NCBI GenBank assembly: GCA_002269645.1
Contig: NIVC01000864.1
Span: 186,001-250,000 of the forward strand
Length of the DNA: 64,000 bases
Direction of reading: 5' to 3'
Source: Macrostomum lignano
Lineage: Eukaryota
The notes beneath the pieces were generated by a model that had not been told where the DNA came from, did no database searches, and saw nothing but the letters and a program-made list of their open reading frames with translations. Position 1 is the stretch's first letter. Every line of letters begins with the position of its first letter. Both the position numbers and the translations under genes were made by a program. Shown here piece by piece: positions 5,861 to 64,000 of the stretch.

Positions 5861-6230
5861 GTGAGACTGAGACTCAGGGTGGTCCCTAAGTGGCTGCTGC
5901 TGCTGCTGGATTGTAAATATTTACCCACTAAACCTTCACTGATCTGTTTGAACTGAAGAACTGAAGAGGATTGTGGGGAGGTTGTCGCAGAGACCCTGCG
6001 CTAAGGACGGGCGGGCCAGGCCATTTTTATCCTCTTGCCTGGCGGCCCGTTCGACCCTTGGAAGCTTCTTGAGTGGAAATTTCAGGCCATTCCAGCCGCG
6101 CTGCCGCTGATTGATGACCGAATCTGGTGGATTAATGCGTGCGGATGGCGGGCCCGGCAGCTGTGCTGATTAAAATAATTGAGCCGGGCTGCCCTGCATT
6201 CGGTGCTGAAGACTTGAAGTTTTCCTATGA

Positions 6231-17912: not shown

Positions 17913-18375
17913 CATGACCAGACATCATGTCTAATCGCAGTTAAAAATGGTCGCAGACAAAAGTCAATGAAGTCCTGTTTGACCACAAATATCTTCATTG
18001 CAGATCAACAGCGCGAGGAGTTGCAGTGCAACAGAAGAAAGTCACGTGGGGTGAGGGTGAACTATCACTGTTCGTGCAGAAAGTTTAGAGCGAAAGCAAT
18101 AAAACCCAAGACCTGTTCTAGCTGGTCCACCTTTGCCATATATGAAAAACAAGAAGGCTTGTGAATTGCAGGCTGGCAATGCTATCTGCAGAGCGACTGT
18201 TTATCTGCCAGATTTCTACACACGCAGTCAAACTGAAACACAGCTCGCAGGAAATCTGGTGGACGCAGATGAACCCCCGCCAGCAACAGCTGCAAGACCA
18301 GGGGTTGAGATGATAAGATAAAAGAAGCAAGTCACAAGACTGCCAATCTGAAATTCAGGTGGGGACAACATAGCC

Positions 18376-18383
18376 TATAAATA
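18376..18383 (+). promoter_or_regulatory. TATA box (TATAAATA) of the pacifastin-like gene
   Basis: Consensus TATA about 110 nt upstream of ATG 18488. Confidence 0.55.
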
Positions 18384-18487
18384 CAATAGCAAAAGCAGCA
18401 AGGCAAGTCTTTCCAATAACACCGGCAGGAGAGAGAGAGAGAGTTTCAAACAGGAATCGACTTCAATTCAACAAGACAGACAAGCAA

Positions 18488-19174
18488 ATGCGCCTGGTAC
18501 TACTGCTGGCGTTGGTCCTGGCGGTGTCTTCGGCCGCCTACGGCCGCAGATTCGGGCGCCGGGGCGGCGGTCGCGGCCGGAACAAGCCGGAGGTCACGTG
18601 CTCGGACCTGAAGGCGCAGAGCATCTGCAACGGAGACGCTTCTCTTGTCGGCTTCAAGGTGTCGGACGGTTGCAACCTGTGCACCTGCGGCTCCAACGCC
18701 GGCCAGGCCACGTGCACCATCAAGTCCTGCCCGCGCCAGACGGAGATCCTGGAGCCCCGGCTGAAACGCAGGGCAGACCGCTTCTGCCAGAAGCTGGCCC
18801 GCCGGGTCGAGAAGAAGAAGCTCCGCTACAAGCGCCGCATGGAGAGGCGAGCCGCCGCCGCCGCCGCTGCCGGTGGCTCTGCTGAACCCGAGCGCTGGCC
18901 AATCAAGTGCTTCAAGGAGCGCAAGCTGTGCCGCCAGCAGCCGGGAGTCAAGTTCTTCGACGGCTGCAACCAGTGCCAGTGCCCGGACACGCCGGCCACG
19001 GCTGCCCAGTGCGAGACCAGCAACACCTGCCCGGAGTTCGTCGGCAGCAAGCGCGAGTTCAAGCGGCACTGCCGCAGTCTGGGCGCCAATATCGAGGGCG
19101 GCAGGCGCGGCAACAGGCGGCGCGGCCGCAGACAGCGCGGCTCTCTGATGCAGTGGCTGGCCCAGCGGTTCTGA
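18488..19174 (+). CDS. Secreted Arg/Gly-rich protein (228 aa) with two pacifastin-like (I19-type) Cys-rich modules
   Basis: Signal peptide MRLVLLLALVLAVSSAAYG; C-x14-CNxCxC-x4-G-x3-CT-x3-C matches the pacifastin pattern; second module DGCNQCQC; GC-rich codon usage; upstream TATA and downstream AATAAA. Confidence 0.85.
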   Translation: MRLVLLLALVLAVSSAAYGRRFGRRGGGRGRNKPEVTCSDLKAQSICNGDASLVGFKVSDGCNLCTCGSNAGQATCTIKSCPRQTEILEPRLKRRADRFCQKLARRVEKKKLRYKRRMERRAAAAAAAGGSAEPERWPIKCFKERKLCRQQPGVKFFDGCNQCQCPDTPATAAQCETSNTCPEFVGSKREFKRHCRSLGANIEGGRRGNRRRGRRQRGSLMQWLAQRF

Positions 19175-20632: not shown

Positions 20633-21145
20633 TCAGTAGCGAGCCTCCGCGCCGCTGCCGCTGCCGGCCGCGCTACCCGGACGCGAGGCGCCGGCTGATC
20701 GGCCGCGCGCGGTGGCGGCCCGCGAGGAGGCAGGCGCCGCGTCAACCGGCTCGCTCTCCCAGCGCTCCAGCTCCTCGCGCACCAGCTGCTCCATCTGTTC
20801 GCGCTTCTGCTCGTCTGACACAGCCTCATTCTCGCTGATGGAGTCCAGCAGCTTGCTCATGGTCTCCCGCCTGCGCAGCTTCGCCTTCTCCATCGCGTCC
20901 AGCTTCACCAGCACGGCGTCAATCTTCGACACGATGCTGCCGATGCTGTGCTCCATGCGGTCCACGCGCCTGGCCAGCACCGTGAACTCCTCCGAGGACA
21001 CGCCGGCGCCGCCGCCGCCGCTCCCGCCGCTGACGCCCCGTCGAGAGCTCCTGAGGCGGTCGTCGGCGTCGGCGCCGAGGTCGGCGGTTGAGCGGGCGCT
21101 GGCTGGACGGTCGCGCTCGGATTGGATCTGGTCGTTTAGGGCGGC
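20633..21145 (-). CDS. PKD2: PKD2 last exon (coiled coil [27 protein letters not shown])
   Basis: Signature polycystin-2 coiled coil; acceptor CCGCAG, phase 0; stop at 20633. Confidence 0.93.
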
Positions 21146-22980: not shown

Positions 22981-23098
22981 CTTCTGGCCCTCCAATTCGC
23001 TGGTCATCCTGCGCTGCTCCTCCTCGTCCAGCACTCGGTCGCCGTCGACGTCATATTTGGCAAACATCGCCTCGATTTCGCCGTCAGCGTAGCCTCGC
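22981..23098 (-). CDS. PKD2: PKD2 exon encoding EF-hand 2 (DVDGDRVLDEEE)
   Basis: RGYADGEIEAMFAKYDVDGDRVLDEEEQRRM is homologous to the PKD2 EF-hand; acceptor TTCCAG and donor GTTAGC; phases 2 and 0 fit the neighbouring exons. Confidence 0.93.
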
Positions 23099-28673: not shown

Positions 28674-28807
28674 ATCTTGAGCTCGGCGCGCCACTCCTCA
28701 AAGTCCAGCTGGCGGTCATTGTTTACGTCAGCAGACTGCATTGCCTTCTGAATGTCGATAATCTTGTCGCGCTTAATGTTGAGCTTGTCCATCACTTTCC
28801 CGGCGCG
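28674..28807 (-). CDS. PKD2: PKD2 exon encoding EF-hand 1 (DVNNDRQLDFEE)
   Basis: RAGKVMDKLNIKRDKIIDIQKAMQSADVNNDRQLDFEEWRAELK; acceptor TTGTCAG, donor GTGAGT; phases 0 and 2. Confidence 0.92.
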
Positions 28808-29405
28808 CTGACAAAACATGGCAAATTAAACAGTTAATTATTCAGCACTGCACTGGCTAATAAATTATTCAGTAGGTAATTAGTGTCGCTTAATTTGCAC
28901 CGATGGATTTCGATAAATAATTAATTAAGATGGAGTGAAACTTGAGCATTACTTGCATTATTAATGATCATGAGTCATAGCAACCAAACAAAAAATGTCT
29001 GATAAGAAGAAAACACAATTTTCCACTATTATACTGCTTTATACTACTTATTAAGATAAGTAGAACAATCAGTTAATATACTAATTAGATGACGAAGAAT
29101 TTAACTAATGATACAGGTATAGTTACTCCCTCTGTTGTTTAACTCATTAAATAGTCACTAATTAGATGACGGGGAATGTAATTATCAAACTAAATACAGA
29201 GTTACTCCCGCCGTTTACCTGTTTGAAATGGTAGGATATCCTAATACAAGCCCCTAATCAGATGGCGAAGAATGTACCAATGGAAAAGGGGCATGGCTAC
29301 TCTCGCTGTTTACCCTTGAATAAAAGATTTCTAAATTTTTGTTCTTAATTAGATGCCGAGGAATTAAACTCATAAAAACAAGACATAGCTACTCATGCCG
29401 TTTAC

Positions 29406-30293
29406 CTCTTTGAAATAGTCGGTCATTTCGAAGTCGTTCGGCTGATTAGCCAGGTCGCTCTTCACCTCGCTGTAGGTGTCGTTAATGATGGCCAAGAACA
29501 TGTTGATCAGCACGAAGAACACGAAGAACACGTACAGCAGGAAGAAGATTGGCCCCAGGACGCGGTGGGCGTTCTCCAATTCGTGGAAATCGAAGTCGCC
29601 CAGAATGATGCGGAACAGCGTGAAGATGGCCTGCTGGAATTCGCGGAAGTCCTTCACCTGGGTGCCGAAGATCAGGTAGCCCAGCTGGGCGAAGGCGAAG
29701 AAGATGATGAAGAACATCACCGCGAAGCCGACCAGATCCTTGGCGCAGGCGCCCAGGGTGGAGCTGAGCTGGGTCATGGTCTTGTTGAAGCTGATGTACT
29801 TGAAGATCTTCACCCAGGCGAAGAACACGGTGATGGCGATGGCGTTGTTGAACTGCAGCTGCCAGTAGGACAGGAAATCGAAGTCGGGAAATTTCGACTC
29901 GTCTTTGAGCAGCTCGGTGAGCTTGTTGCCAACGGCGATGGTGCGGTAGACGTTGAACCCGGCGCACACCAGCGAGATGATGATGACCAGGATGTCCAGC
30001 CAGTTCCAGAAGCTCTTGAAGTAGCCCAGCTTGTGCCGCTTAATCTCGATGACCTCCTCAACAACGTAGTAGCAGATGAACAGCATGAAGATGATCTCGC
30101 AGATCAGCACAACGTAGTCCCGAGGCTCCACGTAGCGCAGCAGCTTGACCGTGCGGTACTCTGATGACGGAATGGCGCCCCCGGTGGCCGGGAACTCCAT
30201 GACCAGCTTCACTACGCAGAACAGGTTGATGTTGGCATTGTACACAGTGAAGTCCACGAAGGCTACCCGGGTGCCGCGATCGATCCACAGGCC
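29406..30293 (-). CDS. PKD2: PKD2 exon encoding S2-S6 and the pore
   Basis: GLWIDRGTR...NANINLFC...[12 protein letters not shown]...[14 protein letters not shown]...[15 protein letters not shown]; 888 nt, phase 0-0, donor GTAAAC. Confidence 0.97.
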
Positions 30294-30332: not shown

Positions 30333-30760
<428 letters not shown>

Positions 30761-30862
30761 TAGATAGTCAAAAATCTAAGGGTGAAGCTATAGAGCCGCA
30801 ATGGATCAAATTGATGCTTGTTGGACCAAATCAAATGCTGCTATTGCAGGCCCATGCCTCAC

Positions 30863-31258
30863 CTTGAACAGCTCCTCAATGATAGCGGCCGAGTCGTCAC
30901 GGTTCCTAGTCAAGTCCACGTAGTAGCCGCCGCCATCGTAGCTGGCAATCTGGCCAGCGTAGCTGCGGCCGTCCAGCTCCTTCTCGGTGGTGTGGTTCCA
31001 AGCCGTGGAGTTCATATAGCCGAACGGGCTTTTCTCCTCAACGCCGGGGCTGTACATGGCGTAGCAGGCTTTGATTTCGTTTTTAAAGTCGTCCGCAATG
31101 GAGCAGCTGTCATTGCGCACTTTTACCTGGCGCAGGCGGGGCACTCCGAGCAGTTTGTTCTCGTAGTAGACAAAATTCACCTCGCGAGAGTCGCTAAAGT
31201 TCAGGTTGTTGTACCAGTTGGTCACGTACAGGCCCTCCAGCAGCGGGCCCTTCACGAA
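30863..31258 (-). CDS. PKD2: PKD2 exon (TOP/polycystin extracellular domain)
   Basis: YENKLLGVPRLRQVKVRNDSC motif; 396 nt, phase 0-0. Confidence 0.96.
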
Positions 31259-31289
31259 CTGCAAGCCAACGATAAGTGAGGGCGTTTCA

Positions 31290-31635
31290 CAAGCTCGAAA
31301 CTTTCACAGGCTTGAAGCTTTCACACAAACTCGAAGCTTCACACAAGCTCAAAGCTTCACACAAACTAGAAGCTTCACACAAACTTGAAGCTTTCACACA
31401 AACTAGAAGCTTCACACAAGCTCGAAGCTTCATAAACTCGAAGCTTCACACAAGCTCGAAGCTTCACACAAACTAGAAGCTTCACACAAGCTGGAAGCTT
31501 GCACACAAACTAGAAGCGTCACACAAGCTGGTAGCTTCACACAAACTAGAAGCTTCACACAAACTGGAAGCTTCACAAACTCGAAGCTTCACACAAACTA
31601 GAAGCTTCACACAAACTCGAAGCTTCACACAAGCT
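31290..31635. repeat. ~19-20-bp minisatellite (GAAGCTTCACACAAACT core)
   Basis: Direct tandem copies. Confidence 0.9.
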
Positions 31636-31653
31636 TGAATATTGCACACTTAC

Positions 31654-31784
31654 CCGCCACCAATCGGCGATGGTAGTCGCGGTGGAAAAGGTGGTCTGGG
31701 TCTCCGAGTTGGGAGCCTGGTCGAACTGGGCCTGCATCACGCTGGTGAAGTAGTACATGGTGGAGCTGGTCATGCCGAACGCCA
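31654..31784 (-). CDS. PKD2: PKD2 exon 3 (end of S1, start of TOP domain)
   Basis: (L)AFGMTSSTMYYFTSVMQAQF...ADWWR; acceptor CTTCAG, donor GTAAGT; phases 1 and 0. Confidence 0.93.
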
Positions 31785-31879
31785 CTGAAGTTGTTGTTAT
31801 TCAATATTTTGCTTATTGGTTCCATACTCCATTGGTGTCTCAGCCGGGATTCGAATCTTCGGGACCCAAGTGGGATCTT

Positions 31880-32715
31880 TGGGATTTTGATTGGGATCGT
31901 TTGGGACTCTAGTTGGGATTGGGATCTCTGGAATTCTAATTGGGATTGGGATCTCTGGAATTCTAACTGGGATTGGGATCTCTGTAATTCTAATTGGGAT
32001 TGGGATCTCAAGTATTTCAATTGGGATTGGGATCTCTGGGATTCTAATTGGGATTGGGATCTCTGGGATTCTAATTGGGATTGGGATCTCTGGGATTCTA
32101 ATTAGGATTGGGATCTGTGGGATTCTAAATGGGATTGAGATCTCTGAGTTCTAATTGGGATTGGGATCTCTGTGATTCTAATTGGGATTGGAATCTCTGA
32201 GATTGTAATTGGGATTGGGATCTCATGGATTCTAATTGGGATTGGGATCTCTGTGATTCTAATTGGGATTGGAATCTCTGAGATTGTAATTGGGATTGGG
32301 ATCTCTGGGATTCTAATTGGGATTGGGATCTCATGGATTCTAATTGGGATTGGGATCTCTGTGATTCTAATTGGGATTGGAATCTCTGAGATTGTAATTG
32401 GGATTGGGATCTCTGGGATTCTAATTGGGATTGGGATCTCATGGATTCTAATTGGGATTGGGATCTCATGGATTCTAATTGGGATTGGAATCTCTGAGAT
32501 TGTAATTGGGATTGGGATCTCTGGGATTCTAATTGGGATTGGGATCTCATGGATTCTAATTGGGATTGGGATCTCTGTGATTCTAATTGGGATTGGAATC
32601 TCTGAGATTGTAATTGGGATTGGGATCTCTGGGATTCTAATTGGGATTGGGATCTCATGGATTCTAATTGGGATCTCTGGGATTCTAAATGGGATTGGGA
32701 TCTCAGAGAGTTTCT
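31880..32715. repeat. 27-bp minisatellite (TTCTAATTGGGATTGGGATCTCTGGGA)n
   Basis: Direct tandem copies with higher-order variant order. Confidence 0.93.
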
Positions 32716-32857
32716 AATTGGGACTAAGGTATTTAGAGGAAACCACCTATCACGTGACACTGAGTAACCGAAAACAATGAAATCCCATACTTGAAAGTGG
32801 ATCAATAAAACTGAGATAAAAAAAATGAACAAAAAAGTCTCGTGAAAAATCACTTAC

Positions 32858-32971
32858 AAACCATGAGAACAATGAGAAAGAACAAATAGACAATGAGCTC
32901 CCGGAGGGTGGTCTTGATGTACAGCTCCCTGTCCTCGCGAGTGTCCTCAGTCATGTTGGTTCGCCAGATTG
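32858..32971 (-). CDS. PKD2: PKD2 exon 2b (114 nt): (A)[37 protein letters not shown]
   Basis: Acceptor TTTAG, donor GTAAGT, phase 1-1; matches the PKD2/PKD2L1 pre-S1 and S1 sequence ([11 protein letters not shown]). Confidence 0.93.
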
Positions 32972-33135
32972 CTAAATTTGGTGAATAGTAGTGAAACTCC
33001 AGCTAATATTGTGATTTAATAAATTGCAGCAAAAAATGTGCAAAATTAAGAAAAAAATTAATACGTTACGGTGACTTCCAAAATTTAATTAATAAAAAAT
33101 AGAGTTCTTTATTATAATACTTCACTATTGTTTAC

Positions 33136-33249
33136 ATATGGACAGGATAGTCAGGTAGACGCAGTACAGAAGCAGCTCCCTCAGGGTGGTCTTAATTCGC
33201 AATTCGGTATCACCAGTCACGTCTACCGTGTCCTTGGTTAGCCACGCGG
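33136..33249 (-). CDS. PKD2: PKD2 exon 2a (114 nt), diverged tandem duplicate of exon 2b: (A)[37 protein letters not shown]
   Basis: Same length and phase as 2b, open frame, 18/37 identical residues, perfect TACTAAC branch site (33281-33287), CAAG acceptor, GTAAAC donor. Confidence 0.8.
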
Positions 33250-33324
33250 CTTGGTTGGGATTTGCGGGAATTGCAGCTTTGTTAGTAATTCTGGTTGGAC
33301 CCTGCCGTCCAATTTCCGGTTGTG

Positions 33325-34580
33325 TTGTGTTTATCCATCAAATCTCACCCAATTTTCATGTGTTTATCTATCAAATCTCACCCAATGTTCATGTGTTTAT
33401 TTATCAAATCTCACCCAATGTTCATGTGTTTATCCAACAAATCTCACCCAATGTTCATGTGTTTATCCATCAAATCTCACCCAATGTTCATGTGTTTATC
33501 TATCAAATCTCACCTAATGTTCATGTGTTTATTTATCAAATCTCACCCAATGTTCATGTGTTTATCTATCAAATCTCACCCAATGTTCATGTGTTTATTT
33601 ATCAAATCTCACCCAATATTCATGTGTTTATCTATCAAATCTCACCAATGTTCATGTGTTTATCTATCAAATCTCACCCAATGTTCATGTGTTTATTTAT
33701 CAAATCTCACCCAATCTTCATGTGTTTATCTATCAAATCTCACCCAATCTTCATGTGTTTATCCATCAAATCTCACCCAATGTTCATGTGTTTATTTATC
33801 AAATCTCACCCAATCTTCATGTGTTTATCCATCAAATCTCACCCAATATTCATGTGTTTATCCATCAAATCTCACCTAATGTTCATGTGTTTATTTATCA
33901 AATCTCACCCAATATTCATGTGTTTATCCATCAAATCTCACCCAATCTTATTGTGTTTATCCATCAAATCTCACCCAATCTTATTGTGTTTATTCATCAA
34001 ATCTCACCCAATCTTATTGTGTTTATCCATCAAATCTCACCCAATCTTATTGTGTTTATCCATCAAATCTCGCCCAATCTTATTGTGTTTATCCATCAAA
34101 TCTCACCCAATCTTATTGTGTTTATCCATCAAATCTCACCCAATCTTATTGTGTTTATCCATCAAATCTCGCCCAATCTTATTGTGTTTATCCATCAAAT
34201 CTCACCCAATCTTATTGTGTTTATCCATCAAATCTCGCCCAATCTTATTGTGTTTATCCATCAAACTCGCCCAATCTTATTGTGTTTATCCATCAAATCT
34301 CACCCAATCTTATTGTGTTTATTCATCAAATCTCACCCAATCTTAGATTTTTGCTAAAAATAAGAGAGGTATCTTATCTGTCAATCCTGATATATTGTGT
34401 TTATCCATCAAATCTCACCCAATCTTATTGTGTTTATTTATGAAATCTCACCCAATCTTATTGTGTTTATCCATCAAACTCGCCCAATCTTATTGTGTTT
34501 ATTCATCAAATCTCACCCAATCTTATTGTGTTTATTTATCAAATCTCACTCAATCTTATTGTGTTTATCCATCAAACTCG
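33325..34580. repeat. 33-bp minisatellite (TCAAATCTCACCCAATGTTCATGTGTTTATCTA)n, PKD2 intron 1
   Basis: Direct tandem copies with a gradient of variants. Confidence 0.95.
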
Positions 34581-34617
34581 CCACTCTCACATCGCTATCA
34601 AATCCCTCGCTGCTCAC

Positions 34618-34932
34618 CTCGCACGCCCGCTTAAAGCGGAACCAGCATCCGTGGGCCTCCTCAACCTCCGGCTCCGTCTGACCGTCGGGATGCTCAAACG
34701 GATTATCGGACTGGCAGGCCTCGGGCTCCTGGTCCAGCACAGTCGGATTGGCGACGTCAACATCGTCGCCGGCCGCTGACCAGGCCTGGCTGCCGCCGTG
34801 CAGCTGCTGCTGAGACGAAGACGGGCGGCCGGCGCCGCTGCGCGACCTGACGCCGGAGCTTTGCGGCCGAGACGACATGTCGGTTTGGTGCACACTGCGG
34901 TCTGAACGGAAAAGTGCGGCGATGGGTTGCAT
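34618..34932 (-). CDS. PKD2: PKD2 exon 1 (N-terminus; start at ATG 34932 or at 34878, MSSRPQ); one base apparently missing near 34626-34628
   Basis: Open GC-rich frame containing an NPFE motif, donor GAG|GTGAGC; adding one G gives KRGVR|AIW, homologous to human VRGLRGLW. Confidence 0.75.
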
Positions 34933-44264: not shown

Positions 44265-45577
44265 ATGAATTCGCACGTCGGCAACTTGACGCTCCTGCTG
44301 TTTTTCACTGCGCTGCTCAAATCAGCCGCTCTGTCAACTTCCGCTGTCGTTTCCCTAACCGGAGACGAAGCTGCCTCGATGTCGTCCAGGGCCGACCAGT
44401 TCTGCGCGCCCGTGCCGATCAGGGTGCCCGTCTGCTCTAAAATCCGCTACAACACCACGGCCAGCTTCATCGCTCAGGATCGAGTCGCTTTCCTACTTGG
44501 CAATCTGCAAGAGCTTGTCAATACGAATTGCGCGCCCTACCTTCGCCTGTTGGCCTGCTCGGTGCACCTGCCTCTGTGCAACAGCGACCAGAGCCTGCTG
44601 GTCCGGCCGTGCCGAGAGTTCTGCTCCTCAGTGAAGGGACTCTGCGAGGCCCAGCTGAGGCGGTACGGCATCGAGTGGCCCAGTCACCTGAACTGCGATC
44701 AGCTAGAGCTGGAGGACAACGGCAGTAAAAAGAATCTCTGCCTGAGACCCATCGAGGAGGAGTTCAACGCCCAGATGATGAAGAAACAGCCGCCACCGCC
44801 GCATCTCCCGCTGCCGCCGCCGCTCTCGCCGCAGATTGTCGGAGCCAGCGCCGGCTCGGGAAACGGCTCCGGAACGGTGGACTCTGCCGCCACTTCCACA
44901 GCCCCCGGTTCGGCTGTGCCCGACGCTGATTGGTCCTCAGATGCTCCGAAGTGCTCCGCCGCTGAGCTTCCAGTCGGCGGAGTCGGCGGCTGGTGCGCCA
45001 AACGATGCCTGTCCAGTTACCTGTTCGCCAAGGAGGATCGCGACTTCGCCGACGCCTGGATGCTCGCCTGGTCTGTGGCCGCCGCCGCCTGCGCCATCCT
45101 GGCTTTGGTCACCTTCCGCCTGGAGCCCGGCCGGTTCCGCTATCCGGAGCGGCCGGTGGTCTGGGTGGCCGCCTGCCACCTGGTCCACGCCGGCGCCCAT
45201 CTGCTGCGCGCAGCGCTCGGCCGGAGCTTGCCTGCAGCCGCTCCTCTGCTGCCCTGTCCGGCAGCCGCGGCGAGCTGGCCCTGGTCAGCCGGCACGCCGG
45301 GCAGTGGTGCGCCGCCATCTTCCTGCTGCTGTACTTCAGCTGGCTGGCCGGCCTGCTGTGGTGGCTGGCCCTGGCGCTGTGCTGGCACCTGAGCGCCGCT
45401 CGGCGCTGGCACCATGGACTGCTGGCTGAAAGGACCGTCTGGCTTCACCTGCTGGCCTGGGGCGCCCCGCTGCTGCTGAGCGTCACTCTGCTGGTGCTGC
45501 ACCGGATCGAGGGGGACGAGCTCACCCACCTGTGGCGTGGTGGACGGCTCCCGCCAGCCGATCTGCTCATGTTTCAG
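44265..45577 (+). CDS. FZD: Frizzled receptor (Fz4/9/10-like), exon 1: signal peptide, 10-Cys CRD, TM1 to start of TM5; frameshift near 45223-45224
   Basis: CRD with all 10 Cys (C-x-PC-x3-C ... WP-x3-NC); FRYPERP in ICL1; WW-x-AL...W in TM3; H-x-x-AWG in TM4; GDELT in ECL2; donor CAG|GTGGGA. Confidence 0.9.
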
Positions 45578-45725
45578 GTGGGAAACTTTGCTAATTCTCT
45601 GGCTGTGTTGTGGGGAAGTAAAAGGATGATTGATAGATCCGGTAGATCCTCTATTCAAATTTTCTGAAAATTTATCGATTCCGGTCAGTTTGAGCGTATT
45701 CTCCACCGCTACCGCCAACCTCCAG

Positions 45726-46469
45726 GTGGTGCCGATGGCCACCGCACTGCTGCTCGGCCTCGGCTTTTTGGCCTCCGCCCTGCGCTCGGCGCTGCTGTCC
45801 GCGGCCGCCGCTGATTCGCCTTTTCCAGCCGACGAGCGCCGGCAGGACCAGCGGCAGGCTGACAAATCCGCAGGCGGAGGAGGAGCTGCTCTCTCGGGAT
45901 CAGCCGAAGGCGCCTCACCGGAGCAGCGGGCGGCCCGCCTCAGCCTGTTCGCCTTCCTGTTCGCCCTGCCGGCCGCCTGCGTGCTTGCTGCCAACGTCTA
46001 CGAGCTGGCCGAGCGCCCGCGCTGGACTGAAAGCCTCGCAGCCGTGCTGGCCCGGCCCGGCTGCGCCAGCCGCCAAGGAGTCAACAGCATCGCCGGGTGT
46101 CGCCTGTCGTCCCGGCCGTCGGCCGCCGTTTACATGCTGAAGATTTTCATGTCGCTGACCGCGGGACTGCCGGCCGGGCTGCTGGTGTGGGCCAACTGGC
46201 AGTCGCTGAGCGCCTGGCGCGCCTGGCTGGGCCGACTGACCAGCCGCTGGACGCGCCGCAAGCAGCTGCCGCAGACCGCGCAGCCGCAGCCGCCTCCTCC
46301 AACGCGGCCGCTGGTGCCTCCGCCACCGCAGCAGCCTCAGCCGCCGTTGCCTCCGCCGCGCGCCAGTCAGCCATCGTCAGCAGCGGCACTATCACGTGTT
46401 CAATCCTGCCCACAGTTGCAGCAGCAGCCAGCAGCAGTACGAGCTGCATCACGCCTACGCTACAGTTGA
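45726..46469 (+). CDS. FZD: Frizzled receptor, exon 2: TM5-TM7 and Pro/Gln-rich tail
   Basis: RLSLFAFLFALPAACVLAANVYE (TM6) and YMLKIFMSL (TM7); acceptor CTCCAG; 148-nt intron in phase 0. Confidence 0.88.
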   Translation: MVPMATALLLGLGFLASALRSALLSAAAADSPFPADERRQDQRQADKSAGGGGAALSGSAEGASPEQRAARLSLFAFLFALPAACVLAANVYELAERPRWTESLAAVLARPGCASRQGVNSIAGCRLSSRPSAAVYMLKIFMSLTAGLPAGLLVWANWQSLSAWRAWLGRLTSRWTRRKQLPQTAQPQPPPPTRPLVPPPPQQPQPPLPPPRASQPSSAAALSRVQSCPQLQQQPAAVRAASRLRYS

Positions 46470-52746: not shown

Positions 52747-53333
52747 TTATCTGATTGTAGGAAAAGTTATCGGAATTTTAAGTCACTTCACTTCGAACTA
52801 TCATTATTATTATTAATTTTTTAGCATTCAATGTAATTTCCATCAGAGGCAATAACCTCCTGCCAACGTGCATGCAGAGAATGGATGCCCTTGCGGTGCC
52901 ACTCGGAGCTGTGGGAGCCGAAGAAGTCATGCAAATGCTTCTCCAAGTCCTCCTCATCCTTGAAGCTGTGATCAGCCATGGACTTTCTGAGCGCGACAAA
53001 AAGGTGGTAATCGGTAGGCGCAATATCTGGGCTGTAAGGTGGGTGGAGAAGAACCTCCCAACCAAGCGCCAGCAGCAGAGAGAATGGGCAACTTCCATGC
53101 GACTATCCAGGTCATGGGCTGCCAGCTTGTGAGGCACCCAGCACCTGAGTTTAGCTTTCATCTCCATCTGGCAGAGATGATCGGCGACGGTCGTCCAGTT
53201 GGCTGCTGATTGTTCTCAGCGAGGAGCGCTTCCAGGGCATATCGTCATCGAGTTCAGGTGGACACACACTGCAAGGTCTGTCCTCAAGGCCCAGTTCTCC
53301 ATTCTCAAGGTGCTTTTACCAATCGTACCTAAT
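52747..53333 (-). mobile_element. Internally deleted mariner (Tc1/mariner) element
   Basis: WVPHKL motif and, in a shifted frame, HPPYSPDIAPTDYHLF...RWQEVIASDGNY; most of the DDD domain is deleted. Confidence 0.88.
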
Positions 53334-55989: not shown

Positions 55990-56537
55990 GTGTTGTGGCT
56001 GCGAGAAAGGCGTCCCACCAGCTAAGGATCTCACGGAGATCATTGTGCACGCGCAGTTACTTGTAGTGCCGCTGCTGCTTCAGCTCACTGAGCTCGAGCA
56101 GGAGTGGTCTCAGAAAGCACCTCCCCTGCGAACTACCTGGCAGACTCAGTTTGAGCGGCCACAGAGCGATCGGAGTTGGCGCTTGATGATGCGTTTGCGA
56201 GAGAGCGCGGATTACAGTCAGTTTGTCCTTCGGAAGCTCCAGCAGGCCGCTGAAGGTGTAGATGAGGACGCCCAGGTAGACCAGCCTGGTGCACGGCGCC
56301 AACACCTTGCTCCAGTTGATGGAGAAGCCAAGTTTCCGCAGCAGATTCAGCAGAGTGTCGAGAGCGAGCTGGCAGTCGTACTTGCTGGGGGCAGCTACGG
56401 CGAAGTCGTCGAGATAGCTTCAGATGTCGTTGAAGCCCCGCCTCTGCATCATGCGCTTGACGGCCTGGCTGGGGCGGTGAAAGACTTTAACGGAGGCGGC
56501 AGCGCCGAAGGGGAGCCGCGTGTCGCAGATGTACGAG
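55990..56537 (-). mobile_element. Degenerate DIRS/Ngaro-type retrotransposon reverse transcriptase fragment
   Basis: Minus-strand reading RLPFG...*SYLDDF...LLRKLGFSINWSKVLAPCTRLVYLGV...LELPKDKL with an in-frame stop; ADDRLTR (RNase-H-end-like) near 55090. Confidence 0.8.
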
Positions 56538-58350: not shown

Positions 58351-58673
58351 TGCTATCGATCAAACTCCTCCGAAAGCAAGGGTAGTCAAGTGTTCTTTCT
58401 TATAAAACAAAACAGCAACATGTGGCATTCAAGCATCTGCTACTATAAAAAGCGATCAGTTCTTGTGAAAGAACAACAGAAAAACTATTTTTTACAAACT
58501 TAAATCAGTATGAAAATTAACGTTTCAAGGAGGTACAAAATTTGTAACTATTTAATCTAATAGCTCTTAAAATAAAAATTAACGACTCCTGGTGATCAAA
58601 GTCCCACAACTTAAAGAAGCCACACTCTTCCCCATTGCTGCCACGGCTCCACCCCGATCCGCACATCCCACAG

Positions 58674-59206
58674 CGGTGGCCAGGACGATGGCGCTGTACT
58701 TTTCGCAGTTCCGCTGGGGCCTGTTCAGCGAAGCCCCACTGGGTGACCCGATACAGAAGAACAAGGATCCGTTTAACAGAGTTCTTTCTCGGCTCCCTTC
58801 CTGCAACCCGGACCTGCAGGTGAAGCTGGAAGTGGCCAGTGGCAGTCAAACCGGACACAGCTGCAAATTCGGCGAACCCAACTGCAAAATCGTGGTGACC
58901 GAGCCAGCGTACTCCAACGCTGCCTCCTTTCTGTTCGCGCCCTACAGGGCCGGAGTGACCCGCTTCTGCGATGCGGACTTTAAGGTTTCCGACCCCAGGC
59001 ACAGGCACAACAAGGATGCCGAAAACTTACACAACATGAATTGCCATCGACGCAGCGCTGCGGAGGTCATCAGAGACCACGAGGATTTTCTACGGCCCAT
59101 CAACTCTGCTACTACAATGAACTCGAATTTCAATGTTCGTCTGGTGGTTGAACCCAAAAGACGCCGCCTTGTGATCGTCATGGATACCTCCGGTAGCATG
59201 GGATCG
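58674..59206 (+). CDS. CLCA: CLCA-family protein, exon 3 (degenerate metalloprotease site, Cys-rich region, start of VWA)
   Basis: LYFSQFRWGLFSE, ASFLF...RFCD...HNKDAENLHNMNCHRRSAAEVIRDHEDF, LVIVMDTSGSM; phases 1 and 0. Confidence 0.88.
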
Positions 59207-59411
59207 GTGAGAAGCCGCTTGCTTTGTCTCAGCTGCGTCGCTTCTTTGCCTCAATTCCATGCTGTGCTCTACCCGAATCGCTTTGTAACAATTCATAAAT
59301 TCTTACGCAATCGTGCTTGCTGGCTTAATTAATTCTTTATTCAATTTTTATAATAAGTACACAAGGGTAAACATCCAGCAATTCATTTTTACCCATTTCG
59401 GACCCATTCAG

Positions 59412-59639
59412 GACAACCGAATGCAAAGTTTAATTGGCGCAGTGAACCATTACATTGCCTTTACTCTGGAGACCGGGTCAGAGTGCGCCCTGATCAGCTT
59501 TACTGGCAACCCCACTGTGCTGCAAAATTTCATCCTGGTTGACTCGCCGGCTGTTCGACGTCAGCTGATGCAATCCGTCTCGAATCTGACTACAAAAGGA
59601 TGGACCTGCATTGGTAAAGCTGTTCAAGAGGCTATGAAG
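59412..59639 (+). CDS. CLCA: CLCA-family protein, exon 4 (VWA)
   Basis: NRMQSL...ALISF...GWTCIGKAVQEA; phase 0-0. Confidence 0.88.
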
Positions 59640-59751
59640 GTGAGTGATTTGGTCATTGAACAGATTTACGCACAGTCAGATTCTTAGACAAGCCATAGTT
59701 CAGGCGAGGTACCACTGACTGAATCCCCTACTCCTCAATCAAATCACCCAG

Positions 59752-59818
59752 CTGCTAGGTGAGGACCCAACAAGCCCAACTAATCGATCGACGGGTCAGA
59801 TACTTTTGGTCTCAGATG
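59752..59818 (+). CDS. CLCA: CLCA-family protein, exon 5 (VWA, GQILLVSDG)
   Basis: Matches VWA GxxIVLLTDG; ends in phase 1 with no matching downstream exon found. Confidence 0.6.
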
Positions 59819-60094
59819 GTTAATGGTTAATGTCTGGTTAATGGTTTAACTAGACATCCTTTATGCTTAACACGCGCTTATTTTTTGTTTGACATTACTC
59901 GTACGTTTCTTTCTTTGTCAAGTTCACACTTTTTCTCCTTAAAAAGCATTCTCCTAAAAAATGTATATATTACAAACTATTTTAGCATAGCAGAGGTAAT
60001 AACGCAATAAGAAGTTAATAATACCTGTGAATATTATAAAATATAAAATATAAACATAAAATAAATGGCATTAATAAATCGCTAATCATTACAG

Positions 60095-60337
60095 CTGGAT
60101 TCGAGGCAAGTTCCCTCTGACCTGCGGTATCCGGTGGAATTCGACGTCAGTGCTCGCAGCAACCTCGTCTTCTCGCTGTTTCTGCCAAGCGATCCCGCCA
60201 AGGTTGGCTCTCTGCGCCTCATGCTTCGGTCGCCGAGCGGTAGGACTTTCGATTGCTCTGGTGGCAGCAGCGCCATTTGCACAGTCGATGTTGCAGTCGG
60301 ATCCGTGACAGTGCAAATTCCTGATGCAGAGATAGAG
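60095..60337 (+). CDS. CLCA: CLCA-family protein, beta-rich domain exon
   Basis: LDSRQV...FDVSARSNLVFSL...LRSPSG; acceptor TTACAG, donor GTCAGT. Confidence 0.75.
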
Positions 60338-60558
60338 GTCAGTTGACTCAATTTACGTGCGGTATGAGCCAATGCTCTCGCTTGCTGGAGGGATTACTTT
60401 ACGACGATAAAAGTAAAAAACAGAAACAAGGAAATCCAAACAGCTACGCTCGTACTTCACTTAGTTAGGGCAGTTAGTTACTAAGAACTAGTAATTCCCC
60501 AACTTTAGGGACTTAAAATAATATTAATCGCCTCGCTTCAAACCCGCCACTCCAACAG

Positions 60559-60876
60559 AGCGGAAAGTGGACGCTGGCGAATCTCGCAGTCGGTCTCGCA
60601 CGCCGGATTCGCAGACAGGCGGCCTCAAACATGCATGTAGTTATCACTGGAAAACCGTTTACTTAAAGTTACTTAAAGTTTACTTAAGGCTTCCTAAAGA
60701 TTCTATCATTAAGGTGTCACCAAACAATGTGAAAATGGTCAAGTATGATACTTCAATCAGTGTCGTCGTGTATCTGTTACCAACATCCCAAATTCGACAT
60801 AACTATCGAATGCACGCAGTTGTCACAGCAGGAAACACAGAAGTGGCTCGATTTAATCTTTTGGAACAACATGGCA
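60559..60876 (+). CDS. CLCA: CLCA-family protein, exon(s) SGKWTL...RRIRRQA...LLEQHG (needs a 32-nt intron at 60657-60688 or a 1-nt frameshift)
   Basis: GxW motif and LLxxxG resemble the CLCA beta domain; internal junction uncertain. Confidence 0.55.
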
Positions 60877-60969
60877 GTGAGTAAAAACTAAACATTCAGT
60901 AGCTGAATTTAAACTGGTACTCTCAGACAATCATTTAAAACTCGTATTACTCAAATTTGCTTCGTACAG

Positions 60970-61242
60970 ATAAAGGAGTATTCACTGCCAAGGTACCTCT
61001 CTATGCAGTACAGAAAGCTGGCCAGTACGCTATTGATGTGTTTATCACGGACCCGTTCAAAACACAGCAGTCTGCCGGCACTTTAACTGTTCAGGCGGAG
61101 GACCCCAACTTTAACAGACGTCGTCTTATTCCTGAACCAATCACGGCGATCTATATAAGTAAAAGAGATTATACCAGCAAAATAATTGAGATCAAATGGA
61201 ATCCAGTTAAAGATCCATCTGGTCTACTCCCGCCTAAAGCAG
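60970..61242 (+). CDS. CLCA: CLCA-family protein, exon (GVFTA... into FnIII-like PEPITAI...IEIKWNPVKD)
   Basis: Phase 1-1; resembles CLCA DGVYS and the FnIII start P-x-x-I-x-D-L...W. Confidence 0.7.
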
Positions 61243-61501
61243 GTAGGTGTTACGCTTGAAGCAGCTCTGCTGATTTTTGAATACAAGCTGAAATATATAA
61301 ACTACAAGTTTCAATACGAGAAAAGCTGAACTATAAGTTGTACTCGTACAGAAACCTTTTTTCTTCACGCTACTAAGTTACCAAAACACACTCTTTGGCA
61401 TCGGGTTAAAAGAGACAACAGGGCCCCAATATCTTTTCCACAGCCGTCATGCACATTTCACTGATTCTAACGCTTACGAGCACCCAAATTACCTCCAACA
61501 G

Positions 61502-61752
61502 AAGTGCCTGTCTACAGTCTTCGCTACGAAGAATCAGGGGACAACTGCGCCGCTGTAAACGGATATTACTCCTGTCCGGAACTGGCTGTCACCAACCAAT
61601 CTTCGGTAAACATCTACAACCAGTATATGGCTCTCAATGAGCCTCCGATGTGGATAGCAGTGATTGCCATTTCCGCTGCAAACGTGCCCAGTGTGTCTAG
61701 AACTTTAATGCGCATTCAAGATACGAAGCCCTTGGCCGCTGAAGACTTGAAG
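61502..61752 (+). CDS. CLCA: CLCA-family protein, FnIII-like exon (YSLRY...WIAVIAISAANVPSVS)
   Basis: Phases 1 and 0; acceptor CCAACAG, donor GTATTA. Confidence 0.65.
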
Positions 61753-61892
61753 GTATTAGGCTTCTCCCTCGACTCAGAGCTTTGAAACTCACTCACTGAG
61801 TAAAGACTCATTTTCAGTTCATTTTGGCAAGTATAGCCTTGAATTCGTTCTCCAGAAAATACTCTTACCGTTCCTCTGTTAGAATTTTTCAG

Positions 61893-63402: not shown

Positions 63403-64000
63403 TTAGGGGGACCCGTCGGTCTCGCCTGCAGCGCGGTCCTCACCGGCGGTGGGGAAGAAATCAGCTCGTCCTGTGTCCCTGAGGTACCGGGCGAGCAGCG
63501 GAATGCTCTCGGGCCTGCAAACGTCGGAGAGAACCGGGTTTGGCCCGAGGTGAGTGAGCCTGGCCCTGGTGAAGACTGGGCAGTGGCAGATAAAATGCTC
63601 GGCGTTTTCACTGCCTGAGCGGCAGAAGGGGCACCGCTCCTCGGGTACTTGGCCCTGAAGGAAGCGGTGGCGAGAGAAGCAGCCATGCCCGGAGAGGGCC
63701 ATGCTAACTGCTCTGAGGTCTCTGCGGTTGAGCCTGAGGAGGGCTCTACGCAGGAGAGGAGAGGGGCAGGGGACGGCAGCGCGGGATTGCCTACAATTCC
63801 GGGTGTCGTGCCACCTGCGGAGATGCTCGGAGTCAGTCCAGCGCTTAACGCGGGAGTTGATCACCGAGGCGGGGATGGGGGCTCCCAGGCCCGGCCCCAG
63901 CAGCGCGCCGGCGGAGCCAGCCTTGGCCAGCATGTCGGCGCGCTCGTTGCCGAGGAAACCGGCGTGGCCCGGGATCCATCTGAGCTGCAAGCACGTTGAG
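63403..64000 (-). mobile_element. 3' end of a non-LTR retrotransposon (I/R1/LOA-like) with RNase H and a CCHC zinc finger
   Basis: LRWIPGHAGFLGNERADMLAK (RNase H), LSGHG, CPFC-x5-ENAEHFICHC; runs off the window end. Confidence 0.92.

What the first reader, a model, noticed from the sequence alone, without database searches (positions are those of the whole stretch)
32858..33249. Candidate mutually exclusive exon pair switching the pre-S1/S1 helix of polycystin-2
Seen: two adjacent minus-strand exons, 33136-33249 (2a) and 32858-32971 (2b). Both are exactly 114 nt, phase 1-1 and stop-free, and are separated by a 164-nt intron. They share 18/37 residues including EL[12 protein letters not shown], but differ in the cytosolic pre-S1 stretch (LTKDTVDVTGDT vs [12 protein letters not shown]) and in S1 (LLYCVYLTILSI vs [12 protein letters not shown]). 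Exon 2a has a perfect TACTAAC branch site 32 nt upstream of its acceptor. The only other AG in between lies just after the branch point and would also be in frame (+27 nt). Its GTAAAC donor is the same hexamer used by the large pore exon at 29405. Established (from memory, verify): human PKD2 exon 2 is c.596-709, also 114 nt and phase 1-1, so the duplicated unit is the ancestral exon. Inference: including both exons would add an extra TM helix and invert the topology, so they should be mutually exclusive. One gene could then give two TRPP channel isoforms, with 2b resembling PKD2L1 ([11 protein letters not shown]). Retention of length, frame and motif despite about 50% divergence implies purifying selection. 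Neither exon appears in the ORF track.
Basis: partly seen in the sequence, partly recalled or inferred. Interest (0 to 1): 0.85.

Follow-up and report, generated by a model that had tools for sequence, protein, structure and literature searches.

The report
Duplicated S1 exon in polycystin channel gene
A polycystin-2-type ion channel gene carries two diverged tandem copies of the exon for its first membrane helix; both copies look selectively maintained, so the gene probably makes two channel versions by alternative splicing, a known trick in ion channels that still needs RNA evidence here.

Summary
On the minus strand, 33249-33136 (2a) and 32971-32858 (2b) are each 114 nt and open only in the phase-1 frame. 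Both are bounded by AG and GT and lie 164 nt apart. They share 18/37 residues. They sit between exon 1 and exon 3 of an eight-exon PKD2/PKD2L1-type channel gene and match human PKD2 exon 2 (c.596-709).

2a is not a decayed relic:
- Synonymous sites are saturated (pS 0.76), while pN is 0.35.
- Differences fall mainly at third codon positions.
- GC3 is 0.70, against 0.24 GC in the intron between the copies.
- All 9 family-conserved residues are kept, including the pre-S1 gating tryptophan.
- Neutral-decay simulations give P of 0.004 or lower.

Mutual exclusivity is only inferred. Including both exons stays in frame but adds a transmembrane helix. I found no enforcing mechanism: no steric block, U12 sites, frame/NMD effect or significant RNA pairing. 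No transcripts or close relatives were available, and cockroach and metagenomic loci have one copy.

One new caveat: as assembled, the exon 1 donor is phase 0, so neither copy joins it in frame. A one-base G-run error is plausible, because a neighbouring Frizzled ORF has a similar frameshift.

Verdict: a credible but unverified new member of a known kind.

The parts
34618..34878 (-). Exon 1 coding part. It runs from ATG (34878-34876) to ...GCWFRFKRACE and ends at the phase-0 donor GAG|GTGAGC.
   Evidence: MSSRPQSS resembles the MSNRPGSS N-termini of homologous transcripts. The GCWFRFKR motif and its spacing to the pre-S1 Trp match P0001, P0006 and P0007.
33326..34576 (-). A 33-nt minisatellite with 37.5 copies that fills almost all of intron 1. 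Each unit carries a donor-like GGGTGAGA.
33281..33287 (-). TACTAAC branch-site consensus upstream of exon 2a. The branch A is 33 nt before the exon.
   Evidence: This is the only ACTAAY motif between exon 1 and exon 3.
33136..33249 (-). Exon 2a, the divergent copy. It is 114 nt, phase 1-1, with an AAG acceptor and a GTAAAC donor, and encodes (A)[37 protein letters not shown].
32972..33135 (-). The 164-nt AT-rich intron (GC 0.24) between the two copies.
32858..32971 (-). Exon 2b, the canonical copy. It is 114 nt, phase 1-1, with a TAG acceptor and a GTAAGT donor, and encodes (A)[37 protein letters not shown].
31889..32723 (-). A 27-nt minisatellite with 31 copies that fills most of the intron between 2b and exon 3. 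Six variant units are 15/18 complementary to the 2b donor region (32851-32868).
   Evidence: Duplex dG is -16.4 kcal/mol, P about 0.02 before correction for 9 tests.
31654..31784 (-). Exon 3, 131 nt, phase 1 to 0. It encodes (L)AFGMTSSTMYYF...DWWR, the end of S1 and the start of the polycystin domain.
   Evidence: Human exon 3 is c.710-843 with the same phases.
30863..31258 (-). Exon 4, polycystin domain.
   Evidence: PF20519, E 3e-31.
29406..30293 (-). Exon 5, a large exon running from the end of the polycystin domain through S2-S6 and the pore to the TRP-like INDTYSEVK. Its donor is GTAAAC.
   Evidence: PF08016, E 1e-78. PDB alignment.
28674..28807 (-). Exon 6, C-terminal, first EF-hand-like stretch, ending in phase 2.
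22981..23098 (-). Exon 7, EF-hand (DVDGDRVLDEEE).
   Evidence: PF00036 gives a weak match, below Pfam's gathering score.
20633..21145 (-). Exon 8 coding part, the coiled-coil C-terminus through to the TGA stop.
   Evidence: The concatenated CDS has a single terminal stop.

Best explanation
An old tandem duplication of exon 2 gave this TRPP (PKD2/PKD2L1-type) channel gene two alternative versions of the segment from the pre-S1 gating tryptophan through most of transmembrane helix S1.

Both copies have been kept as protein-coding sequence by purifying selection. This part is shown.

The likely use is alternative splicing in which a mature mRNA carries one copy or the other. 2b, with its stronger splice sites and more canonical sequence, would be the default. 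2a, with an AAG acceptor and a GTAAAC donor offset by a perfect TACTAAC branch site, would be the regulated minor choice. This part is inferred.

The two isoforms would differ in two places. One is the 12-residue linker between the Trp that contacts the TRP-like helix and the invariant IKTTLREL motif. The other is the lipid- and subunit-facing residues of S1. Either difference could tune gating, PIP2 coupling or subunit assembly. This part is speculative.

The cis mechanism that would stop both exons being included is not identified.
For: Duplication: the copies have equal length and phase, AG/GT at equivalent positions, and find each other at E 1e-8 as the only two copies in the window.

Orthology to the ancestral exon: human PKD2 exon 2 is c.596-709. 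Both peptides align in register to PKD2L1 residues 80/81-115, and 2b also to PKD2 residues 200-237.

Selection on 2a:
- pS is 0.76 (saturated) against pN 0.35. Nucleotide differences by codon position are 13/13/24, hypergeometric P 0.003.
- 10 of the 18 identical residues use different codons.
- With 50 random substitutions, P(amino-acid identity of 18 or more) is 1.5e-4 or lower.
- GC3 is 0.70, against 0.76 for 2b, 0.81 for exon 4 and 0.24 GC in the intron between the copies.
- The codon-usage log-likelihood is +6.2 in the proposed frame and -52 and -27 in the other two. That is above the 99th percentile of intron windows, and P is 0.004 against neutrally decayed 2b.
- In a panel of 20 unique homologous peptides, 2a keeps 9 of 9 conserved columns. 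2a equals 2b in 9/9 conserved columns and 9/28 variable ones, Fisher P 4e-4.
- The flanking intron sequence of the two copies shows no significant similarity. Only the exon was preserved.

Other points:
- The kept Trp corresponds to PKD2L1 W81 and PKD2 W201, which are required for channel function (PMC6483072).
- The 2a version of S1 is still hydrophobic, with mean Kyte-Doolittle hydropathy 2.09 against 2.75 for 2b.
- Including both exons is in frame but gives two pre-S1/S1 units in tandem.
- Tandem-duplicated substitution exons are enriched in ion channels (PMC9741552).
Against: - No transcript data of any kind were available, so use of 2a and mutual exclusivity are untested.
- No orthologous locus from a close relative was available. 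The best relatives are 56% identical or less.
- No second same-strand copy was found in any other locus examined. That includes the genomic contigs L001, L030-33 and L040-42 and the cockroach Periplaneta americana.
- The 2a splice sites are weaker than those of 2b.
- No exclusion mechanism was found.
- The 164-nt intron looks spliceable, which would favour including both exons if 2a is recognised.
- As assembled, the exon 1 donor is phase 0, so neither 114-nt exon joins it in frame.
Confidence: 0.6

Rival explanations
1. 2a is a dead or dying duplicate, a pseudo-exon that is never or only negligibly spliced. The gene makes only the 2b isoform.
For: 2a has the weaker acceptor (AAG, with no pyrimidine tract) and the weaker donor (TAT|GTAAAC). 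It is more divergent from homologues, hitting PDB at E 0.009 against 1e-9 for 2b. It matches the family consensus at 21/37 positions against 25/37 for 2b. Other sampled lineages have a single copy.
Against: With synonymous sites saturated, a neutral copy should have lost its frame, its conserved residues, its GC3 and its codon bias. All are retained, with P between about 1e-4 and 4e-3 in four separate tests. The flanking intron has randomised while the exon has not. A very recent loss of function cannot be excluded.
Confidence: 0.15
2. 2a is used but not in a strictly exclusive way. It may behave as a cassette exon that is often included together with 2b, or both may be skipped, giving in-frame non-channel or regulatory products alongside the 2b form.
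For: Both exons are symmetric at 114 nt, so including both or skipping both keeps the frame. The 164-nt intron has ordinary signals. No steric, U12, NMD or RNA-structure device was found.
Against: A protein with two pre-S1/S1 units would place the polycystin domain on the wrong side of the membrane. 2a retains exactly the residues needed to replace 2b, including the gating Trp. That pattern is hard to explain unless 2a substitutes for 2b in a working channel.
Confidence: 0.12
3. The assembly is correct at exon 1, and the exons really start at upstream phase-0 acceptors. These are CAG|GGTCCA at 33301, giving a 166-nt exon, and TAG|CTGGAG at 33002, giving a 145-nt exon. The units would then not be 114-nt phase 1-1 exons.
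For: Both extended exons join the phase-0 exon 1 donor in frame without any correction. For 2b the 33002 AG is the first AG after the long U-rich tract of the intron.
Against: The extensions have non-coding composition, with GC3 of 0.29 and 0.40 against 0.70-0.81 in the exons. They would insert 18 or 11 residues where the spacing from the GCW motif to the Trp is identical in three other lineages. The intron is phase 1 in human. A second one-base frameshift, in the neighbouring Frizzled ORF at GGCCGG^AGC, suggests that G-run errors occur in this assembly.
Confidence: 0.08

Closest known systems
Tandem-duplicated, mutually exclusive exons in voltage-gated-like ion channels. From my own knowledge these include Nav exon 5N/5A, Cav1.2 exon 8/8a, and Drosophila para and slowpoke. 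The class is reviewed in PMC9741552 and PMC8373072.
   Same: These are adjacent homologous exons of equal length and phase that encode a transmembrane segment of a six-transmembrane channel repeat. Both copies are under purifying selection, and one is more divergent. The class is enriched in ion channels.
   Different: Those cases have transcript proof. Many are not multiples of 3, so including both copies is removed by frameshift and NMD. Here the exons are 114 nt, so the frame is kept, no transcript evidence exists, and the segment is pre-S1/S1 rather than S3-S4 or S6.
Mutually exclusive exons reported in other TRP channels, for example TRPL exons 2/3 in Bactrocera dorsalis (PMC6137742).
   Same: Same channel superfamily and the same type of splicing event near the N-terminal part of the protein.
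   Different: A different subfamily (TRPC-like rather than TRPP). That paper describes Pkd2 genes without such exons. I found no report of a mutually exclusive pair in any PKD2/TRPP gene in the searched library.
Human PKD2 exon 2 (c.596-709) and the pre-S1 region of PKD2L1.
   Same: Same length, phases and encoded segment, PKD2 residues 199-237. The W201/W81 Trp and the K/IKTTLREL-type motif are conserved.
   Different: The PKD2 splice-variant table I read lists a single exon 2 between IVS1 and IVS2. I did not examine the PKD2L1 gene structure. The window gene has also lost most of the downstream introns, so that one 888-nt exon covers S2-S6.

Membership tests
TRPP / PKD2-family cation channel gene | Polycystin domain followed by the PKD_channel six-transmembrane pore module | tested here: met
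   PF20519 at E 3e-31 and 3e-19, and PF08016 at E 1e-78. PDB hits are PKD2L1 6du8 at E 2.8e-201 and PKD2 5k47 at E 2.6e-191, across residues 11-513 of the model.
TRPP / PKD2-family cation channel gene | Pre-S1 Trp and TRP-like Lys pair needed for gating (PKD2L1 W81/K568) | tested here: met
   The Trp is present in both 2a and 2b. INDTYSEVK is present at the end of exon 5.
TRPP / PKD2-family cation channel gene | Intact reading frame across all exon junctions | tested here: inconclusive
   All junctions from exon 2 to exon 8 are canonical GT-AG and consistent in phase. The exon 1 to exon 2 junction is off by one base as assembled.
Tandem-duplicated mutually exclusive exon pair | Adjacent exons of the same length and phase with significant sequence homology | tested here: met
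   114 nt and 114 nt, both phase 1-1, 164 nt apart, 18/37 residues identical, E 1e-8.
Tandem-duplicated mutually exclusive exon pair | Both copies retain splice sites and evolve as coding sequence | tested here: met
   AG/GT is present at both copies. The tests are pN well below pS, excess differences at the third codon position, GC3, codon-usage likelihood and retention of conserved residues.
Tandem-duplicated mutually exclusive exon pair | Each exon is found in mature transcripts, and the two are never or rarely found together | not testable with these tools
   No RNA-seq or cDNA of the source organism was available. The protein databases hold no product of this gene.
Tandem-duplicated mutually exclusive exon pair | A mechanism that enforces exclusivity: steric donor-to-branch-point distance, U2/U12 incompatibility, frameshift with NMD, or competing RNA structures | tested here: not met
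   The intron is 164 nt with branch-like motifs near the acceptor. All sites are GT-AG. 114 is a multiple of 3. No inter-intron pairing exceeds shuffled controls. The best lead is the 2b donor pairing with the downstream repeat, at P about 0.02 uncorrected. Trans-acting regulation cannot be tested.
Tandem-duplicated mutually exclusive exon pair | Conservation of the pair in related species | not testable with these tools
   No close relative was available. Distant loci, including Periplaneta americana, have one copy.
Decayed pseudo-exon | Stops, indels, lost splice sites or a neutral substitution pattern | tested here: not met
   2a shows none of these.

The most novel reading that the evidence does not exclude
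This would be the first mutually exclusive exon switch described in a polycystin (TRPP) channel. An old, selectively maintained swap of the pre-S1 linker and the S1 helix would give one gene two channels that differ in coupling between the N-terminal Trp and the TRP-like helix, in PIP2 sensitivity, or in assembly with PKD1-like partners. Exclusivity would be enforced by an as yet unknown mechanism, because including both exons is in frame and none of the known devices is visible.
Probability: 0.45. Interest if true: 0.5.

Novelty: new member of a known kind. Interest (0 to 1): 0.4.

Why it matters
If it is real, it adds the polycystin subfamily to the list of channels diversified by tandem exon substitution. 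It also marks the stretch from the pre-S1 Trp through S1 as a naturally tunable module. That is the segment through which the N-terminus contacts the TRP-like helix and PIP2 acts (PMC6483072). The two isoforms would be a ready-made natural experiment for structure-function work on TRPP gating or subunit assembly.

It would also be a mutually exclusive pair whose length is a multiple of 3. Such a pair cannot rely on NMD, which makes its control mechanism of some interest.

Beyond that, this is an ordinary example of a well-known evolutionary route, and it currently has no expression evidence.

Tried and rejected
1. Docking/selector RNA pairing.
   - An inverted-repeat scan of 31650-34640 and RNAduplex tests with shuffled controls covered the splice-site windows, the 164-nt intron and the two minisatellite units. 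Nothing was significant.
   - The only lead is the 2b donor pairing with six variant units of the downstream repeat: 15/18 complementary, dG -16.4, P about 0.02 before correcting for 9 tests.
2. Other exclusion mechanisms. Steric hindrance, U12 sites and frame/NMD do not apply.
3. A shared 9-mer, GCTGCAATT, lies upstream of both exons.
   - It occurs only three times in the window.
   - The local alignment of the flanks is not significant, P 0.05.
   - No complementary copy exists in the neighbouring introns.
4. Orthologues.
   - The N-terminal protein search gave 10 hits, the best at 52% identity.
   - The metagenome scan gave 37 loci at 56% identity or less, mostly intron-less transcripts.
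   - None has a same-strand second copy. The cockroach locus has one copy within 10 kb upstream.
5. 2a and transcripts L017-L021. 2a looked closer to these (YAVYL...ISI, 57% identity). This is not an outlier, because 2a is 43-57% identical to all homologues. It is 2b that is unusually far from that group.
I did not submit a structure prediction, because that tool carries the same restriction on input sequences.
7. Splicing-factor motifs (Rbfox, MBNL, CELF, PTB). None lies near the exons apart from the ACTAAC branch motif.
8. Rfam gave no hit in the window.
9. The source organism was not identified. A pacifastin-domain ORF and the extreme load of simple repeats hint at an arthropod, perhaps a crustacean. 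The PKD2 protein itself scores highest against vertebrate PKD2L1.

Full report
**The gene**

The minus strand between 34878 and 20633 encodes an eight-exon channel of about 851 residues.
- A rough concatenation of the open frames from exon 1 to exon 5 hits human PKD2L1 (6du8, E 2.8e-201) and PKD2 (5k47, E 2.6e-191) across residues 11-513.
- Pfam finds the Polycystin domain and PKD_channel.
- The C-terminal exons carry EF-hand-like stretches and a coiled-coil tail.
- The exon coordinates are 34878-34618, then 2a or 2b, then 31784-31654, 31258-30863, 30293-29406, 28807-28674, 23098-22981 and 21145-20633.
- All junctions from exon 2 onward are GT-AG and consistent in phase, and the concatenated CDS has a single terminal stop.
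- The first three intron positions and phases match human PKD2 (c.595/596, c.709/710, c.843/844). Most downstream introns have been lost.
- The introns are almost entirely minisatellites.

**The observation**

Exon 2a (33249-33136) and exon 2b (32971-32858) are each 114 nt.
- Each is open only in the frame that leaves 2 nt at the start and 1 nt at the end.
- Each is bounded by AG and GT, and they are separated by a 164-nt intron with 24% GC.
- They share 18/37 residues and 63/114 nt.
- Each finds the other at E 1e-8, and there is no third copy in the window.
The one correction is that the branch A is 33 nt, not 32, from the exon.

**Is 2a a live exon or a relic?**

The duplication is old: pS is 0.76, which is saturated, and 10 of the 18 identical residues use different codons. 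The intronic flanks of the two copies no longer align significantly. Against that background, 2a behaves like coding sequence.
- pN is 0.35.
- Differences fall 13/13/24 by codon position (P 0.003).
- GC3 is 0.70, like the neighbouring exons and unlike the intron.
- With 50 random substitutions, 18 or more identical residues arise in at most 1.5e-4 of simulations.
- A codon-usage likelihood trained on the other exons gives +6.2 in the proposed frame and -52 and -27 in the others. This is above the 99th percentile of intron windows. Only 0.4% of neutrally decayed 2b copies reach it.
- I built an independent panel of 20 unique homologous peptides from metagenomic loci plus PKD2L1. Nine columns are at least 85% conserved, and 2a keeps all nine.
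- 2a and 2b agree in 9/9 conserved columns and only 9/28 variable ones (Fisher P 4e-4).
- 2a alone still finds only PKD2L1 among 177,635 PDB sequences, in register at residues 81-115 (E 0.009). 2b scores E 1.3e-9.
- The retained Trp is the PKD2L1 W81 / PKD2 W201 residue that binds the TRP-like Lys and is needed for channel activity (PMC6483072).
- The 2a version of S1 remains hydrophobic.

I conclude that 2a has been translated as part of a working channel for most or all of the time since the duplication.

**How it probably works**

2b has the better sites (TAG acceptor, GTAAGT donor) and the more canonical sequence. 2a has an AAG acceptor without a pyrimidine tract and a TAT|GTAAAC donor, but it has the only perfect TACTAAC in the region.

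This is the usual picture of a default exon paired with a regulated alternative. Because each exon encodes one complete pre-S1/S1 unit, a functional channel needs exactly one of them.

Including both exons, or skipping both, stays in frame. NMD therefore cannot police the choice. I also found no steric, U12 or RNA-structure device.

The one lead is that the 2b donor (UCUCAUGGUUU|GUAAGUG) is 15/18 complementary to six variant units of the downstream minisatellite. The duplex dG is -16.4, with P about 0.02 before correction for 9 tests.

Mutual exclusivity is therefore an inference from protein topology. It is not something the sequence demonstrates.

The only canonical donor at the end of exon 1 is GAG|GTGAGC, which is phase 0. 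Joined as assembled, both copies run into stops.

Three other lineages share the GCW motif of exon 1 at exactly the same spacing from the pre-S1 Trp, and the human intron is phase 1. The expected junction is therefore ...GAG G|GT.

A one-base undercall of a G run would explain the conflict. The neighbouring single-intron Frizzled-like gene needs exactly such a one-base correction at GGCCGG^AGC to align through TM2 to TM3 with FZD1.

The alternative is upstream phase-0 acceptors at 33301 and 33002. These are in frame, but the added sequence has non-coding composition and breaks the conserved spacing.

**Comparative and literature context**

- No close relative was reachable. The best matches are 56% identical or less.
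- No other locus has a second same-strand copy. This holds for the genomic contigs L001, L030-33 and L040-42, and for Periplaneta americana within 10 kb upstream of exon 3.
- The duplication is therefore lineage-restricted, although old.
- The searched literature describes tandem-duplicated substitution exons as enriched in ion channels. It reports mutually exclusive exons in another TRP channel. It reports none in PKD2/TRPP.

**Verdict**

The mutually exclusive reading is the best explanation, at about 0.6, but it is unproven. This is a new member of a well-known kind and of moderate interest.

Noticed in passing
window 34610-34625 (minus strand): The exon 1 donor GAG|GTGAGC is phase 0, while both exon 2 copies need one base from exon 1. 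As assembled, the gene is frameshifted at this junction. A missing G (GAGG|GT) would fix it.
   Followed up: partly
window 44265-46469 (plus strand): A GC-rich (63%) Frizzled-like gene has a CRD, seven transmembrane helices and one 149-nt intron (45578-45726). It also has a one-base frameshift near 45220 (GGCCGG^AGC) between TM2 and TM3. After a one-base correction it aligns continuously to FZD1 (E 5e-54). This is either an assembly indel or a very recent pseudogene.
   Followed up: partly
window 33326-34576, 31889-32723, 31288-31632, 30333-30767: Four consecutive introns of the channel gene are almost wholly tandem repeats: 33 nt x37, 27 nt x31, 18 nt x19 and (TAGA)x109. The intron 1 unit carries a consensus-like 5' splice site (UUGG|GUGAGA) in every copy. 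It appears to derive from the sequence just after the real exon 1 donor.
   Followed up: no
window 32851-32868 versus 32221, 32329, 32437, 32464, 32545, 32653: The last 11 nt of exon 2b plus its donor are 15/18 complementary to six variant units (CAAUUAGAAUCCAUGAGA) of the downstream minisatellite. This could mask the 2b donor. It is marginal statistically.
   Followed up: partly
window 33022-33030 and 33269-33277 (minus strand): The exact 9-mer GCTGCAATT lies upstream of both exon copies and occurs only once elsewhere in the 64 kb. It may be leftover homology or a shared regulatory element. No complementary site lies nearby.
   Followed up: partly
window 18374-19171 (plus strand): An ORF with a signal-peptide-like start and a pacifastin-type protease-inhibitor domain (PF05375, E 1e-8). 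From my own knowledge this family is mostly arthropod, which gives a hint about the source organism.
   Followed up: no
window 58583-61782 (plus strand): Several open frames from a CLCA-like gene (calcium-activated chloride channel regulator). The N-terminal domain PF08434 scores E 2e-8.
   Followed up: no
window 52824-53102, 56060-56419, 63406-63999 (minus strand): Transposon remnants: a mariner-type transposase fragment (judged by eye from HPPYSPDIAPTDYHLF; Pfam found nothing), a reverse-transcriptase fragment (YLDDF) and the RNase H / C-terminal part of a retroelement.
   Followed up: no
L037 3566-3670 (minus strand) and 6004-6111 (plus strand): A metagenomic contig carries two PKD2-like pre-S1/S1 segments on opposite strands. 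These are two divergently oriented paralogous genes, not an exon duplication.
   Followed up: no
L017, L018, L020, L021: These are full-length AT-rich PKD2-like transcripts from environmental samples. Their S1 (LIIYAVYLVIISI or LILYCVYLAIICI) resembles exon 2a more than 2b. I judged this to be within the normal spread for 2a rather than evidence of an ancient shared exon type.
   Followed up: partly
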